A stretch of 63,475 nt of DNA, counting the filler, from Octopus bimaculoides (taxonomy: Eukaryota): the NCBI RefSeq assembly GCF_001194135.2. It is 8 parts of 7 records of this genome, joined end to end, with 100 filler letters (N's around TTAATTAATTAA, not from the genome) between each part and the next. Parts side by side here need not be neighbours in the genome. Positions count along the whole stretch, not along the records: positions 15,517 to 32,101 come from NC_068982.1; 7 more parts are not named here. One strand, written 5' to 3'. The notes beneath the pieces were generated by a model. It had not been told where the DNA came from, did no database searches, and was given only the letters and a program-made list of their open reading frames with translations. Below are positions 20,846-27,197 of this stretch, piece after piece. Every line of letters begins with the position of its first letter. The stretch's first letter is position 1. The translations under genes and the position numbers were made by a program.

Positions 20846-21347
20846 ATGAAAGCGGCTTTCTTTGGTGTTTTTGCTTTGTTTTTGATAGTCTGTCTGTCGA
20901 CCACAAGTACAGCTCCGGTTGACCCATCGGAAGATGCAGTAGGAACATCAAATGATTCCCAACCAATCATTCCTTTACCAAAACCTGTAGCCGCAGGAAA
21001 AGCCGAACCTGAACCCCAACCCGAACCCGAGACGACCGTCGACCCCGAAACTCTCCCCATCTCTATAAAATCTGGTTCGGCTAGTCTTACCTGGCTACCT
21101 GAAGCAGATCGAAGAATTGTCGATCTTAATTGGTATGTTGACCATCTGGTAAAGAAGAACCGTGCTCTGAAACTGAAATTTGAAAAATTTGAGGAAATTT
21201 TAAAAAATCTTCATGACGAAGAAAAAAAAATGTCTGAAGAATTGAATCGTTGGAATATGGGATTATTTTTCCCAGGAATGGCCCATGTCCACGAGACCAT
21301 CGGCATTACAGGTCATATTTTAAACAAAGTAGGAGCAAAAGTCGAAG
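20846..21347 (+). CDS. Module A: first coding exon of a putative secreted protein (signal peptide, Pro/Glu linker, coiled coil), 167 codons plus a phase-1 donor
   Basis: aaacATG in good context; MKAAFFGVFALFLIVCLSTTSTA signal-peptide pattern; PEPQPEPE linker; heptads RIVDLNWYVDHLVKKNRALKLKFEKFEEILKNLHDEEKKMSEEL; donor GAAG|gtaagt; non-repetitive, GC-elevated sequence. Confidence 0.75.
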
Positions 21348-21719
21348 GTAAGTTTCATTTCAAATATATACATATATTATTATTATTTTTGCTCTGTATT
21401 GGAGATGGTGAACAACAGCGTCGTTAGGTATGTGTTGCACGTGTTCAACTGGTCGGTCGCTGCTTCACAGTATTTCTGACGATCGGAGTAAGAAGGAAGT
21501 TTGTGTAACATGAGGCAGAACAATTATTTGTCTATTTACACATACATGTACAACTTTACACAAACGTCATTCGCTGTATATACACACTCACAGGCACGCA
21601 TTCATAAATGCATATCTGTCTGTCTATCTGTCTGTCTGTCTATATTTATATTTATATATATGTATACACACATGCATACATACATAAACCGATATACTGG
21701 TGTTTCTGTCCACCCGCAG

Positions 21720-21760
21720 CCGTGGTAATAATGATATCTCACATAGAAAGAAGGTTCTAG
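21720..21760 (+). CDS. Possible short terminal exon for module A: (A)VVIMISHIERRF*
   Basis: gtgtttctgtccacccgcag| acceptor; phase 1 is compatible with the 21347 donor. Otherwise unsupported. Confidence 0.25.
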
Positions 21761-22233
21761 GTTTTGGAAGGGGAGGGGGCTGGAGGTGACAAGTGGAAGG
21801 TAATTTCTTTTATCGACCCCCTAAAAAGAATGACAGAGTTACTTTTGCTAAAGTCGAACGATTGATTTCTGTATAGTCGTTTGGAAGCTGTACGCGCGCA
21901 CGTGTGAGTGTGTGTGTGTGTGCACGTGTTTGTGCGTGTGCATTTATAGTGTGTATTTGTGTTTCCGTATGTTGTTGTAATTGTTGTTTAACCCCAGGTC
22001 GACTCACATTAAACAACAAACTTATGATTGAAAAAAAAAAAAAAAATAAGGTTCCACCCTTGACCATNNNNNNNNNNNNNNNNNNNNNNNNNNNNNNNNN
22101 NNNNNNNNNNNNNNNNNNNNNNNNNNNNNNNNNNNNNNNNNNNNNNNNNNNNNNNNNNNNNNNNNNNNNNNNNNNNNNNNTCTTTCCGGGTCAATAAATT
22201 AAATACCAGTTGCGTACTGAGTTCGATCCAATC

Positions 22234-22508
22234 CAGGGGTTTTCAAACTGTGGTCCGCGGACCACAGGGGGTCCGTAGACAGCAGATACTTTTTATGGGC
22301 AATTTGATTTTATATATGTTTTTTAATCGAAATCTTTTAATTGACAATAAACCTATTTGTTAAATACTGTTAAATAAATAAATGTAAAAATATATGTTAT
22401 TTTAAGCAAATATTTTTGTATAAATTTCATAAGCGTTTATAAGGGGGTCCCTAAGGTAAAGCCTGAAATATAAAGGGGTCCGCAAGTCAAAAAGTTTGAA
22501 AACCCCTG
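22234..22508. mobile_element. hAT-like MITE inserted in a SINE
   Basis: Perfect 16-bp TIRs caggggttttcaaact / agtttgaaaacccctg; 8-bp TSD atccaatc / atctaatc. Confidence 0.9.
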
Positions 22509-23718
22509 ATCTAATCGACTGGCCCCATCCCCCAACATTTCGTGTTTTGTACCTAGAGTAGAAAAGAATATTTTTCAAGCCATGTGAAGGGGAAAATGGT
22601 GCCCAGGTTTTACACGGCCCCGGGACTGGGTGTTATATCACAAAGAAGGGCACCAACCCGCTGCCATCGAATTACGATGAAAATCATTTTATCCATGGCC
22701 CCTTAAAATGACGACGGTAATGTTTATTTAAATTCATATTATTTTATGTTATGAATTGAGGCCATGCTGGGGCACGATCTTGAAGTGTTTCATTCGCACA
22801 AACTGACCCCAGGACTTATTTAAATCTAGTACTTGATTTTCAACTATCCTTCGCCGCAGCGCCAATTTATTGGGATGTAAACAAACCAACATTGGTTTCA
22901 AGCGGTATGGGGGAGACAGACACAAGAACACAGACACATACATATGCATTTTTTATATATGCTGGGTTTCTGCACAGTTTCCATTTACCATATTCACTCA
23001 CAAAGATTTATTTGGCCCAGGGCTATCGTAAAAGATACTTGCCCAAGGTGCCGCGCAGTGGGACTGAACCTGAAACTATGCGGTTGCAAAGCGATCTTAG
23101 CCATATATCTTTTTTGTTTTTTGTTTTTACATTTTTAGTTTTATATTTTTAAGACCGTAAGGGAATCTTACTGTTATTTCTAGCAGATGAAGCGGCCATG
23201 TTGAGGCACAGTGATGTGGAAAACTGGGTGTTGCAGGCAAAACCAAAAGTAGGTAGAGTTATGACTGACAGATGAGACTGATTCTGACAGGTGGGGATTG
23301 ATTGTGATAGACGGCGATTGATAAAGGATCTGAAAGTAACTATGAATTAACGGTGGGCGGGAAGAAGACAGGCGGTCTTGAGGATGCTGGAAGTAGGTGA
23401 CGGTGGAGGAGCGGGGGTGGGTAGTTTGTGTTGTGTGCCAAAAACTCTGAAACCAACCAACCAACCAACCAACCAGCCAAACAGCCAGCCAATCAGATTT
23501 CGTGTCTGTCTGTCCGCCAGTCTGCCTGTACGTCCGTAGGATTTGTCTTGTTGCCGGTCTGCCTAGCTCAGCCCTTGCCTTCTGTTCTACCAATTCGAAA
23601 CCTGGCTAGCTAGAGCCGGCTACACTAAACAAACCCACTTTACACAGCAAGGAGAATAAAACTGGTAAAACAAATAATAATAATAATAACAACAACAACA
23701 ATTTTTTTAAAAAGTGAA

Positions 23719-24766: not shown

Positions 24767-24802
<36 letters not shown>

Positions 24803-25897
24803 GGTATGTAAATATGTGCGTAAATAAATGTATGAATGAGTATATATGCCTGTATGACTTGTATGTTTGTGCGTGAATGTGTGTGCTTGTACGAGTTCAA
24901 TGGTTGTATGAGTGTGTACGTGTGTGCGCGCGCGTGCATGCGCGTATATGAGTGTGAATGCTTGTGTGTGAGTCTGTGTGTGTTTGTGTGTGTGTGTGTG
25001 TGTATGAATGTGCATGTGAGCGTGTCTGTAAGCACGCGCACACGCGTGTGTGTGTCCGTGCAAATATGTGCGCGTGCGGCTCCTGTTACCGTTTACCAAA
25101 CCCACTCATATGCCTAGAAGAACCAATCGCCCAAAGTACCGCGCAGTAGGACCGAACCTGAAACCAAGTGATTACAAAGCGAGTTTCTTAACCATGCATG
25201 CGCCTATATCAGCAAAATAAACAATTTATTAATTTATTATTTTTTCTTTNNNNNNNNNNNNNNNNNNNNNNNNNNNNNNNNNNNNNNNNNNNNNNNNNNN
25301 NNNNNNNNNNNNNNNNNNNNNNNNNNNNNNNNNNNNNNNNNNNNNNNNNNNNNNNNNNNNNNNNNNNNNNNNNNNNNNNNNNNNNNNNNNNNNNNNNNNN
25401 NNNNNNNNNNNNNNNNNNNNNNNNNNNNNNNNNNNNNNNNNNNNNNNNNNNNNNNNNNNNNNNNNNNNNNNNNNNNNNNNNNNNNNNNNNNNNNNNNNNN
25501 NNNNNNNNNNNNNNNNNNNNNNNNNNNNNNNNNNNNNNNNNNNNNNNNNNNNNNNNNNNNNNNNNNNNNNNNNNNNNNNNNNNNNNNNNNNNNNNNNNNN
25601 NNNNNNNNNNNNNNNNNNNNNNNNNNNNNNNNNNNNNNNNNNNNNNNNNNNNNNNNNNNNNNNNNNNNNNNNNNNNNNNNNNNNNNNNNNNNNNNNNNNN
25701 NNNNNNNNNNNNNNNNNNNNNNNNNNNNNNNNNNNNNNNNNNNNNNNNNNNNNNNNNNNNNNNNNNNNNNNNNNNNNNNNNNNNNNNNNNNNNNNNNNNN
25801 NNNNNNNNNNNNNNNNNNNNNNNNNNNNNNNNNNNNNNNNNNNNNNNNNNNNNNNNNNNNNNNNNNNNNNNNNNNNNNNNNNNNNNNNNNNNNNNNN

Positions 25898-25958
25898 GTG
25901 AGAGAAACAGAAGAATCGGAAGAAGAAGAAGAAGAAGAAGAAGAAGAAGAAGAAGAAG

Positions 25959-25990
<32 letters not shown>

Positions 25991-27197
25991 GCAGAAGCGG
26001 TGGCCGAAGAAAAAGAAGAAGAGATAACAGAAATAAAAGAAACAGTTGAAGTAGATATAGAAGGAGATAAAAAAACAGAAGTAGACGAAGAAGAAATAGA
26101 AGAAAAAGCTGTAGAAGTAGAAAAAGAAGACAAAAAAGCGGAAGAAATAGAAGAAAAAAAAGAAGAAAAGGCCGCAGAAGTAGAAAAAGAAGAAGATAAA
26201 AAAGCGGAAGAAATAGAACAAAAAGAAGAAAAGGCCGCAGAAGTAGAAAAAGAAGAAGATAAAAAAGCGGAAGAAAAAGAAGAAAAGGCGGTAGAAGTAG
26301 AAAAAGAAGATAAAAAAGCAGAAGAAATAGAAGAAGAAAAAGAAGAAAAGGCAGTAGAAGTAGAAAAAGAAGATAAAAAAGCAGAAGAAAAAGAGGAAAA
26401 GGCCGTTGAAGAAGATAAAAAAGAAGAAAAGGCCGTAGAAGTAGAGAAAGAAAAAGATAAAAAAGCGGCCGAGGCAGAAGAAAAAGAAGAAAGTGAACTT
26501 GGAAAAGTGGACCCAAAAGTCGATCCGGTATCAATACCCGAACCGGAATCGGATGAACCAGTTGAGAAAAAAACTGATGCCCCAGTAGCTCTACCCGAGA
26601 ATGACGCCGGCGTAGCTACAGCGCAACCATCAGCAGCAGCAGTGACGACCGATGCTCCGAAACGTGGCACGAAAAGTCCCAAAAAACCGAAGAAAAAACC
26701 TAGAAGGAAACCGAAGAAGCCGCGTAGGAGAGGTACGAAAGCTCCGAAGAAGGTTACTACCGCTGCCCCAAAGGTCGTTATTACAACCACCCCAAAGGTA
26801 GTTACCACTACAACACCAAAGGTAGTTACCACTACAACACCAAAGGTAGTTACCACTACAACACCTAAAATAGTTACTACAACCACTCCAAAAGTAGTTA
26901 TCACCACAACACCTAAGATAATTACCACTACAACGCTTGAGCCGTGTGTAGACGTATTTAGCGTCGAAGAGAAGCGTTACCAATGCAAAGGTTACTGGAA
27001 ACGAGGATTAACTATTCTTGGTCTGCAAATTAACAAACTCAAGAAGGATAACCACGAACTGTTTCTAAAAGTCATCGACGCCAATGGTAAAATCAAGTTG
27101 GCCCAGGAATCGATCGCTGAACACAAAATCAACGTCAAAGCTCTCAAGAAAAAATTTGCTTGGCCAGACAAAGACAATCTCGGAAACACGCACAAAG
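25898..27197 (+). CDS. Module C: large exon with start in a gap. Poly-Glu, Glu/Lys repeats, a Lys/Arg/Pro basic block, PKVVTTTT mucin-like repeats, then Cys-pair and coiled coil; phase-1 donor
   Basis: 1.3-kb stop-free frame with distinct compositional blocks; ends LEPCVDVFSVEEKRYQCKGYWKRGLTILGLQINKLKKDNHELFLKV...NTHK G|gtaagt. Confidence 0.78.

What the first reader, a model, noticed from the sequence alone, without database searches (positions are those of the whole stretch)
20846..27197. Cluster of three homologous secreted coiled-coil modules, all ending in phase-1 donors: tandem novel family or variable-first-exon array
Seen: three + strand coding blocks within 6.4 kb, ending GAAG|gtaagt (21347), TCAG|gtgagc (24322) and AAAG|gtaagt (27197). 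All are phase 1 and come right after a coiled coil. A and B each begin with their own ATG and signal-peptide-like stretch behind UTR-like sequence. A and C align without gaps as RRIVDLNWYVDHLVKKNRALKLKF / RGLTILGLQINKLKKDNHELFLKV (R.[IL]..L...[VI][DN].L.K.N..L.LK). No downstream exon encoding a recognisable domain is visible for any of them. Inference: this layout matches clustered variable first exons spliced to shared constant exons (established for vertebrate clustered protocadherins and UGT1). It equally fits three short tandem paralogs, or one gene A-B-C, since the phases permit A to 24041 and B to 25899. I recognise no known family.
Basis: partly seen in the sequence, partly recalled or inferred. 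Interest (0 to 1): 0.8.

Follow-up and report, generated by a model that had tools for sequence, protein, structure and literature searches.

The report
Three alternative starts of an octopus fibrinogen-like gene
Three neighbouring octopus coding blocks, each with its own start, secretion signal and coiled coil, lie just upstream of the exons for a fibrinogen-type lectin domain and probably act as interchangeable first exons of that one gene, though no RNA data could be checked.

Summary
The three + strand blocks are real coding sequence. A is 20846-21347, B is 23719-24322 (with a gap inside) and C is 25898-27197 (its 5' end is in a gap). All are under purifying selection and conserved in order in Octopus vulgaris and Argonauta hians.

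In the gap-free relatives each block has its own ATG and signal peptide, an acidic low-complexity stretch, about 49 residues of heptad repeat and a consensus donor in phase 1. The gaps in B and C lie inside single exons.

- **No known family:** in both relatives the next conserved exon downstream starts a Fibrinogen_C domain with a phase-1 acceptor (cag|AT TGY = Asp-Cys). It lies beyond the end of this piece. C is therefore the first exon of an angiopoietin-like/FGL-like protein.

A and B have no domain exons of their own and are known only from octopods.

My preferred reading (about 0.5) is that A, B and C are alternative first exons spliced to the two shared fibrinogen-domain exons. The main rival (about 0.3) is that A and B are separate small secreted proteins. 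The two public gene models that chain the blocks use cryptic, non-conserved splice sites. RNA junction reads are needed to decide.

The parts
20650..20790 (+). Non-coding block 60-200 nt upstream of A's ATG, conserved as far as Argonauta (e.g. GTCGCCGGCAAACGAGGCCATTTGCTTCGT). Probably A's own promoter or 5' UTR.
   Evidence: Four-species alignment. Elsewhere only coding blocks align with Argonauta.
20846..21347 (+). Block A, a complete first coding exon. It has an ATG, a signal-peptide-like helix (about aa 1-23), a disordered P/E-rich stretch, a heptad helix at aa 86-141 (nt 21101-21268) and a highly conserved tail RWNMGLFFPGMAHVHETIGITGHILNKVGAKVE. It ends in phase 1.
   Evidence: dN/dS 0.15-0.22; AlphaFold2; heptad test 0/300. 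Orthologues are P0001, P0002 and P0003.
21348..21353 (+). Splice donor of A, gtaagt.
   Evidence: The same position reads GTAAGT in the window and O. vulgaris, GTAGGT in the L002 species and GTCAGT in Argonauta. Alignment with Argonauta stops 8 nt past it. Read-through tails differ in sequence and length: 27, 29, 6 and 7 codons.
23484..23496 (+). CCAAT box (CAGCCAATCAG) about 225 nt upstream of B's ATG, conserved in O. vulgaris and Argonauta. Probably part of B's own promoter.
23719..23791 (+). Block B, 5' part: ATG and signal peptide MSRRSFSLFLLLGSLMFIVVALLG. It is cut by the assembly gap.
   Evidence: The identical peptide is continuous with the rest of B in O. vulgaris L006 8704-9229.
23792..24037 (+). 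Assembly gap inside the B exon. In O. vulgaris it corresponds to about 168 nt encoding an acidic D/E/S-rich stretch.
24038..24322 (+). Block B, 3' part: P-C-x12-C, a heptad segment, then the linker WKDFRGPSVSVLPDDTYLNVINITVPGELS. It ends in phase 1.
   Evidence: heptad test 8/300. 60% identical to Argonauta.
24323..24328 (+). Splice donor of B, gtgagc.
   Evidence: GTGAGC in the window and O. vulgaris, GTGGGT in Argonauta. Read-through tails are 28, 8 and 2 codons and are unrelated to each other.
25250..25897 (+). Assembly gap hiding the sequence just upstream of C, together with C's ATG, signal peptide and first ~85 codons.
   Evidence: Window 25244 and 25903 align to L006 10138 and 10671. 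C's ATG is at L006 10417.
25898..27197 (+). Block C, the visible part of the first exon of the fibrinogen-domain gene. It contains E-rich repeats (25919-26490), a basic K/R/P stretch, PKVVTTTT x7 (26768-26934), P-C-x12-C, a 49-residue heptad segment and the linker FAWPDKDNLGNTHK. It ends in phase 1.
   Evidence: heptad test 0/300. The tail is 80% identical to Argonauta. In P0003 it is joined as HK|DCSDAF to Fibrinogen_C.
27198..27203 (+). Splice donor of C, gtaagt. Its partner acceptor (the first fibrinogen-domain exon) lies beyond the end of the piece.
   Evidence: That exon is 11.4 kb downstream in O. vulgaris and 4.0 kb downstream in Argonauta. tblastn finds no such exon in the window.

Best explanation
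The piece holds the 5' half of one octopod gene for a secreted angiopoietin-like/FGL-like fibrinogen-related protein. The gene has three alternative first exons, A, B and C.

Each first exon has its own promoter region, start codon and signal peptide. Each also has an acidic disordered stretch, a coiled-coil oligomerisation segment of about 50 residues and a conserved linker, and each ends at a consensus donor in phase 1. Transcription starting at any one of them would splice that donor to the single phase-1 acceptor of the first of two constant exons. That acceptor reads cag|AT TGY, so the split codon becomes the Asp of the Asp-Cys that opens the domain. The constant exons encode the fibrinogen C-terminal globular (lectin-type) domain and lie downstream of this piece. 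Intervening first exons have no usable acceptor and would be skipped.

The result would be three secreted proteins with the same recognition head on three different stalks: short (A), acidic with a Cys pair (B), and very long with acidic, basic and mucin-like parts (C).

Shown here:
- the exons, their phases, selection and synteny;
- the C-to-fibrinogen-domain junction in two annotated orthologues;
- the absence of other conserved exons.

Inferred:
- that A and B actually splice to the fibrinogen-domain exon;
- promoter function;
- oligomerisation and lectin function.
For: 1. All three donors are phase 1 in the window, O. vulgaris and Argonauta, and the first fibrinogen-domain acceptor is phase 1 in both relatives.
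2. Pfam Fibrinogen_C begins exactly at that junction: P0003 residues 531-693, E = 4.6e-37.
3. Between the window or O. vulgaris and Argonauta, the only conserved blocks on this strand are A, B, the C signal peptide, the C tail and the first fibrinogen-domain exon. A and B therefore have no detectable downstream exon of their own.
4. Conservation stops 5-12 nt after each donor. The G at +5 is conserved in every species for all three donors; the T at +6 is conserved only for A. Read-through tails differ in length and sequence.
5. A and B are under purifying selection. Their most conserved parts are the linkers that abut the donor.
6. Each block has its own ATG and signal peptide. A has a conserved upstream non-coding block, and B and C have CCAAT or GC-box-like motifs upstream.
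7. No poly(A) hexamer lies within 800 nt after A's donor in O. vulgaris.
8. All three share the same build: signal peptide, acidic low-complexity stretch, about 49 residues of heptad repeat and a linker. B and C also share P-C-x12-C.
9. Signal peptide plus coiled coil plus fibrinogen domain is the architecture of the closest solved relatives, ANGPTL2/6 and FGL1. It is also reported in a scallop FREP (PMC11741071, listed).
Against: - No transcript or junction evidence could be obtained. Neither public annotation contains an A-to-domain or B-to-domain product.
- Argonauta annotates A plus B as a separate 290-aa gene, and O. vulgaris chains truncated A, B and C.
- Exact look-ups of hypothetical A-, B- and C-to-domain products found nothing. 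The expected C product was missing too, so this says little.
- A, B and C are not detectably homologous and share no promoter motif, unlike known variable-first-exon arrays.
- Argonauta's A donor, GTCAGT, is weak at +3.
- AATAAA or ATTAAA lies about 430-510 nt after B's donor in all three species. This would also allow a short independent B transcript.
- Phase 1 is the commonest phase after signal-peptide exons, so the phase match is only modest evidence.
Confidence: 0.5

Rival explanations
1. A and B are two independent small genes. Each encodes a secreted coiled-coil protein of about 140-160 residues specific to octopods, lying between an RRM-protein gene and the fibrinogen-domain gene. Only C belongs to the fibrinogen-domain gene. 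The GT sites after A and B would be unused, so the protein ends in a short variable tail, or they would splice to short or non-coding 3' exons. One sub-version is that A and B pair with C's coiled coil to form a mixed, fibrinogen-like oligomer.
For: - The Argonauta annotation keeps A plus B apart from the 790-aa Fibrinogen_C gene. The authors named it after an 'uncharacterized protein' LOC rather than a fibrinogen-like protein.
- A, B and C show no detectable homology.
- Poly(A) hexamers lie about 430-510 nt after B's donor in three species. The L002 species has a stop plus AATAAA 16 nt after A's donor.
- Contigs L002-L005 are collinear with the genome across A's donor. They are bounded by microsatellites and are probably genomic, so this carries little weight.
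Against: - The read-through tails are not conserved: 27, 29, 6 and 7 codons for A, and 28, 8 and 2 for B.
- The donor consensus is conserved exactly where homology ends.
- O. vulgaris has no poly(A) hexamer within 800 nt after A.
- There is no conserved downstream exon other than the first fibrinogen-domain exon.
- All three donors share the phase of the fibrinogen-domain acceptor in three species.
- The Argonauta A-to-B junction uses an AG that is absent from Octopus.
Confidence: 0.3
2. There is a single transcript chain A to B to C to the fibrinogen domain, as in O. vulgaris model CAI9718332.1, or A to B as in Argonauta GAB1598905.1. On this view the blocks are successive internal exons of one protein.
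For: - Two public gene models chain the blocks.
- The O. vulgaris annotation pipeline used Iso-Seq and RNA-seq as well as ab initio predictors (PMC10700109).
Against: - The chain needs a donor inside A (TG|gtatgt, created by the Trp-Tyr-Val codons). That would discard the most conserved half of A.
- It needs acceptors inside purine-rich coding sequence with no pyrimidine tract (...gataattccag|, ...gataaaaaag|).
- Argonauta's A-to-B acceptor (tcgttag|) is not present in Octopus.
- The two models disagree with each other.
- P0003 also has a spurious last exon, because the fibrinogen-domain ORF continues in exon 2 to a stop.
- B and C keep their own conserved ATG and signal peptides. These would be pointless inside a chain.
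Confidence: 0.07
3. A and B are decaying relics of duplicated first exons with no present function.
For: They have no domain exons of their own, and no annotation links them to a domain.
Against: - Open frames, signal peptides and donors are intact in three or four species.
- dN/dS is 0.15-0.22 for A, and pN is well below pS for B.
- Synteny is conserved between Octopus and Argonauta.
Confidence: 0.03

Closest known systems
[quoted passage not shown]
   Same: - Secreted proteins built as signal peptide, N-terminal coiled-coil oligomerisation region, then a C-terminal fibrinogen-related globular domain.
- The octopus domain matches ANGPTL2 at E = 1.2e-32, ANGPTL6 at 5.3e-32 and FGL1 at 2e-30.
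- The domain begins at an exon boundary with Asp-Cys.
   Different: - The N-terminal parts show no sequence similarity to any known protein.
- C carries very long acidic, basic and mucin-like repeats.
- The end of the domain is unusually short...NLNQMWCSNGCLRWGDTRVVSSIMRIRP.
- Up to three alternative N-terminal exons may feed one domain.
Variable-first-exon clusters: vertebrate clustered protocadherins and UGT1A
   Same: - A tandem row of first exons, each with its own start codon and probably its own promoter.
- Every first exon ends in a donor of the same phase.
- The row is followed by a small set of shared constant exons with a matching acceptor.
- No usable acceptor was found in front of B or C.
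   Different: - There are only three exons.
- They are not detectably paralogous.
- They share no promoter element.
- Each encodes a signal peptide plus an oligomerisation stalk, not the ligand-specific part.
- Splicing of A and B to the constant exons has not been shown.
Vertebrate fibrinogen alpha/beta/gamma gene cluster
   Same: - Three neighbouring coding units for secreted chains with coiled coils, linked to a fibrinogen-type globular domain.
- B and C have a Cys pair just before the coiled coil.
   Different: - Fibrinogen chains are separate complete genes. The beta and gamma chains each have their own globular domain, and disulfide rings sit at both ends of the coiled coil.
- Here only one set of domain exons exists.
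- A has no cysteine.
- There is no evidence of hetero-oligomers.

Membership tests
Fibrinogen-related proteins (Pfam PF00147 Fibrinogen_C; angiopoietin-like/FGL type) | A C-terminal fibrinogen-like globular domain in the same protein | tested here: met
   Met for block C through its orthologues. O. vulgaris P0003 has PF00147 at E = 4.6e-37, starting at the C junction. The Argonauta exon scores 1e-5, and the 790-aa Argonauta gene carries PF00147. The domain exons themselves lie outside this piece.
Fibrinogen-related proteins (Pfam PF00147 Fibrinogen_C; angiopoietin-like/FGL type) | A signal peptide and an N-terminal coiled coil ahead of the domain | tested here: met
   Each block has its own ATG and a hydrophobic N-terminus. 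Heptad tests give A 0/300, B 8/300 and C 0/300. AlphaFold2 gives A a helix at residues 86-141. No dedicated signal-peptide predictor was available.
Fibrinogen-related proteins (Pfam PF00147 Fibrinogen_C; angiopoietin-like/FGL type) | Blocks A and B physically joined to the domain in a mature mRNA or protein | not testable with these tools
   No transcript data were reachable. Exact look-ups of hypothetical products were negative, but so was the expected C product.
Variable-first-exon array (protocadherin/UGT1A type) | Several first exons, each with its own start codon, and donors all in the phase of one shared constant acceptor | tested here: met
   There are three ATG-plus-signal-peptide exons. 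All donors are phase 1 in three species, and the first fibrinogen-domain acceptor is phase 1.
Variable-first-exon array (protocadherin/UGT1A type) | Each variable exon has its own promoter | tested here: inconclusive
   A has a conserved upstream block, B a conserved CCAAT box, and C GC and CCAAT-like boxes. There are no CAGE or TSS data.
Variable-first-exon array (protocadherin/UGT1A type) | The variable exons are paralogues of one another | tested here: not met
Only the overall build is shared, plus P-C-x12-C in B and C.
Variable-first-exon array (protocadherin/UGT1A type) | A shared conserved promoter element in front of each variable exon (protocadherin type) | tested here: not met
   The three upstream regions share no 8-10-mer that is conserved in both O. 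vulgaris and Argonauta.
Variable-first-exon array (protocadherin/UGT1A type) | Mutually exclusive splicing of each first exon to the constant exons | not testable with these tools
   This needs junction reads or full-length cDNA.
Vertebrate-type fibrinogen chains | Each chain is a complete gene, with disulfide rings at both ends of the coiled coil | tested here: not met
   The mature part of A has no Cys. B and C have one Cys pair, before the helix only. A and B have no domain exons of their own.

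The most novel reading that the evidence does not exclude
An octopod fibrinogen-related lectin gene is built like a protocadherin or UGT1 cluster, but with the logic inverted. 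The recognition head (the fibrinogen domain) is constant. What varies by promoter choice is the secretion signal plus the oligomerisation and tethering stalk: a short version, an acidic version with a Cys pair, and a long acidic/basic/mucin-like version. The arrangement has been kept since before Octopus and Argonauta split. I found no report of such an array for any fibrinogen-related protein (limited search).
Probability: 0.45. Interest if true: 0.6.

Novelty: new variant of a known kind. Interest (0 to 1): 0.4.

Why it matters
Fibrinogen-related proteins are major innate-immune and matrix lectins in molluscs. Their diversity is usually put down to gene expansion and sequence diversification of whole genes.

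A conserved locus where one lectin head can be mounted on three unrelated secreted coiled-coil stalks by promoter choice would be a different way of diversifying such proteins. The choice could change valency, partners or tissue anchoring.

There are practical points too:
- Two public gene models at this locus are probably wrong: O. vulgaris CAI9718332.1 and Argonauta GAB1598905.1.
- A and B are conserved coding sequences restricted to octopods that current annotations do not represent properly.

If A and B turn out to be independent genes, the finding shrinks to two orphan secreted coiled-coil proteins next to an ordinary fibrinogen-domain gene.

Tried and rejected
- **Pfam on A, B and C:** nothing above noise.
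- **PDB sequence searches with profiles of A, B and C:** only coiled-coil noise, E >= 0.07.
- **Word-indexed protein search with the C tail:** no candidates. This search was wasted.
- **Word-indexed search with an A+B alignment:** only P0001 and P0002 again.
- **Full HMMER scan:** the profile kept only the A columns, so B was never scanned exhaustively. P0004, a 2356-aa protein with 23 repeats, is a spurious coiled-coil match.
- **Exact look-up of the window's A read-through ORF:** not on record.
- **Exact look-ups of hypothetical O. vulgaris products:** A-, B- and C-to-domain forms and the read-through forms are all absent.
- **Literature searches** for the SRR runs behind P0001, for LOC115224852, and for octopus fibrinogen-domain genes or alternative first exons: nothing specific.
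- **AlphaFold2 on the C tail as a single sequence:** pLDDT 42, uninformative.
- **First heptad test with 28-residue windows:** not significant for C (64/300). Longer windows were significant.
- **Contigs L002-L005 as evidence for an unspliced A mRNA:** rejected. They are collinear with the genome for about 480 nt upstream and are bounded by microsatellites, so they are probably genomic reads.
- **Fibrinogen-domain exon inside the window:** looked for and not found. It lies beyond 32101.

Full report
**What is in the sequence.** The piece (15517-32101) is AT-rich, repeat-rich animal DNA with six internal runs of N. It is collinear at 83-92% identity with Octopus vulgaris chromosome OX597815.1 from 18112 to 31827 (locus L006).
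- A: ATG at 20846 to GAAG|gtaagt at 21347 (167 codons plus 1 base).
- B: ATG at 23719, cut by the gap 23792-24037, resuming in frame at 24040 and ending TCAG|gtgagc at 24322.
- C: readable from the gap edge at 25898 to AAAG|gtaagt at 27197.

All three end in phase 1.

**The gaps.** Two gap-free relatives settle this: O. vulgaris (L006) and Argonauta hians (L001).
- B is one uninterrupted exon in both. The window's gap replaces about 168 nt that encode an acidic D/E/S-rich stretch in O. vulgaris.
- C in both relatives starts with its own ATG and signal peptide (MSVIEMRFCFSFWQLVCVALIFL...). In the window that start, and the sequence just upstream of it, fall inside gap 25250-25897.

**Are the blocks real coding sequence?** Yes.
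- Between the window and Argonauta the only strong matches on this strand are the three blocks.
- Between O. vulgaris and Argonauta the list is A, B, C's signal peptide, C's tail and one further exon downstream.
- Substitution counts show purifying selection. A has dN/dS 0.22 against a third octopus-like species (contigs L002-L005) and 0.15 against Argonauta. B has pN 0.22 against pS 0.77. The C tail has pN 0.10 against pS 0.84.
- Heptad periodicity over 49 residues beats shuffles in all three: A 0/300, B 8/300, C 0/300.
- AlphaFold2 models A as a signal helix, a disordered stretch and one long confident helix at residues 86-141.

**Are they homologous to each other?** Not detectably.
- Pairwise blastp gives E >= 0.08.
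- hhalign on two- or three-species profiles gives probability about 0.2% for each pair.
- What the blocks do share is their build: signal peptide, acidic low-complexity stretch, about 49 residues of heptad repeat, a conserved linker and a phase-1 donor. B and C also share P-C-x12-C just before the helix.

**What lies downstream.**
- In Argonauta the gene that starts at C is a 790-residue product with Pfam Fibrinogen_C.
- Its first domain exon begins tttcag|AT TGT GCT GAT, a phase-1 acceptor. Any of the three donors, which all end in G, would complete GAT (Asp) ahead of Cys.
- O. vulgaris has the same junction (cag|AT TGC). There, protein CAI9718332.1 (P0003, UniRef 'Fibrinogen C-terminal domain-containing protein') reads ...GNTHK|DCSDAF..., and Pfam Fibrinogen_C starts at that point with E = 4.6e-37.
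- The domain is encoded by two exons (L006 23382-23529 and 34504 to about 35020). The second runs to a stop, so the last exon of the P0003 model is spurious.
- The closest solved relatives of the domain are ANGPTL2, ANGPTL6, FGL1 and ficolins, at E 1e-32 to 1e-28.
- The first domain exon is 11.4 kb after C's donor in O. vulgaris and 4.0 kb after it in Argonauta. In the window it lies beyond 32101, and tblastn finds nothing.
- C is therefore the first exon of an angiopoietin-like/FGL-like fibrinogen-related protein. It is not a novel family.

**What A and B are.**
- A has only octopod relatives in a full HMMER scan of 1.84 billion representatives: P0001 (a Logan contig ORF), P0002 (Argonauta) and P0003 (O. 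vulgaris). P0004 is a spurious repetitive coiled coil.
- B was covered only by the word-indexed search, which found nothing beyond P0002.
- Neither block has domain exons of its own. The A-B and B-C intervals hold only repeats.

**The two public gene models disagree, and both look like predictor artefacts.**
- Argonauta GAB1598905.1 joins A's donor to an AG inside B's signal-peptide codons. That AG is absent from Octopus.
- O. vulgaris CAI9718332.1 cuts A at an internal TG|gtatgt formed by Trp-Tyr-Val codons, which discards A's most conserved half. It then uses two acceptors in purine-rich coding sequence with no pyrimidine tract.
- The O. vulgaris annotation is an EVidenceModeler consensus of transcripts, protein alignments and ab initio predictions (PMC10700109). 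The model therefore need not have transcript support.

**Weighing the layouts.**

In favour of real donors:
- The consensus sits exactly where cross-species similarity ends.
- The G at +5 is kept in every species for all three donors, and the T at +6 is kept for A.
- The read-through tails vary freely: 27, 29, 6 and 7 codons after A, and 28, 8 and 2 after B.

In favour of the fibrinogen-domain exon as their partner:
- It is the only conserved downstream exon.
- It has the matching phase in every species.
- The linkers that abut the donors are the best-conserved parts of A and B.
- O. vulgaris has no poly(A) hexamer within 800 nt after A.

In favour of separate first exons rather than a chain:
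- Each block has its own conserved ATG and signal peptide.
- A has a conserved upstream non-coding block, B a conserved CCAAT box, and C GC and CCAAT-like boxes.

Against:
- No RNA evidence could be reached.
- No annotated A- or B-to-domain product exists.
- The exons are not paralogous and share no promoter motif.
- Poly(A) hexamers lie about 430-510 nt after B's donor.
- Phase 1 is common after signal-peptide exons, from general knowledge of intron phases.

I put alternative first exons on shared fibrinogen-domain exons at about 0.5, independent small genes A and B at about 0.3, a chain at about 0.07 and relics at about 0.03.

**Comparison with what is known.**
- The product type is well known: signal peptide, coiled coil and fibrinogen domain, as in ANGPTL and FGL proteins and in molluscan coiled-coil FREPs (PMC11741071, listed).
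- The possible novelty lies in the gene layout. It resembles protocadherin and UGT1A clusters in having several promoter-linked first exons and one shared acceptor. It fails two of their features, paralogy of the variable exons and a shared promoter element, and it varies the stalk rather than the recognition part.
- It is not a vertebrate-type fibrinogen chain cluster.

**Verdict.** I rate it a new variant of a known kind, of moderate interest (0.4). The decisive test is junction reads from the three donors to the first fibrinogen-domain acceptor.

Noticed in passing
window 22234-22508: A short element of about 275 bp bounded by perfect 16-nt terminal inverted repeats (CAGGGGTTTTCAAACT / AGTTTGAAAACCCCTG), like a MITE. 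The alignment to O. vulgaris breaks at 22067 and resumes at 22508, so the element seems to be absent from the orthologous O. vulgaris site. Gap 22068-22180 clouds the left edge.
   Followed up: partly
window about 18985-19165, 23028-23100, 25130-25200, 28502-28817, 31827-32101: Copies of a dispersed SINE-like repeat (translated motif ...PKVPRSGTEPET...). The copies at 18985-19165, 28502-28817 and 31827-32101 each match many places in both orientations across the 48-kb O. vulgaris locus. Copies also occur in the Argonauta locus.
   Followed up: partly
window 29515-29922 (- strand): An ORF fragment with a reverse-transcriptase match (Pfam RVT_1, E = 5.8e-6, 26.6 bits, below the 29.6-bit cut-off). 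It is probably a decayed retroelement in the long intron after C.
   Followed up: partly
L006 6001-41976 (O. vulgaris CAI9718332.1) and L001 10001-13864 (Argonauta GAB1598905.1): Both public gene models at this locus look mis-joined. They use cryptic donors and acceptors inside coding sequence. The O. vulgaris model also has a spurious last exon, because the fibrinogen-domain ORF continues in the second domain exon to a stop at about L006 35020.
   Followed up: yes
window about 18112-19377; L006 1-3153; L001 1-7535: The upstream neighbour on the same strand in both relatives is an RRM-domain protein gene. The window aligns with its 3' end, so the order RRM gene, A, B, C, fibrinogen-domain exons is conserved from Octopus to Argonauta.
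   Followed up: partly
window 27241-27366: Directly after C's donor the intron opens with pure (GGC)n, (GGT)n and (TTG)n runs. The O. vulgaris and Argonauta introns have comparable triplet-repeat runs at the same place. Whether this is chance or has a function is unknown.
   Followed up: no
window 25919-26934: C's low-complexity part is built from nested tandem repeats: (GAA)n, units of about 63 nt and 114-117 nt encoding EKEEKAVEVEKEDKKAEE, and a 24-nt unit repeated 7 times encoding PKVVTTTT. The last resembles a mucin-like O-glycosylation stalk. Copy numbers differ between the window, O. vulgaris and Argonauta.
   Followed up: partly
L006 34504-35020: The octopus fibrinogen domain has an unusually short C-terminal part (...GGWWSGNCITNLNQMWCSNGCLRWGDTRVVSSIMRIRP) compared with ANGPTL2. 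Matches to solved structures stop at about residue 179 of 216.
   Followed up: no
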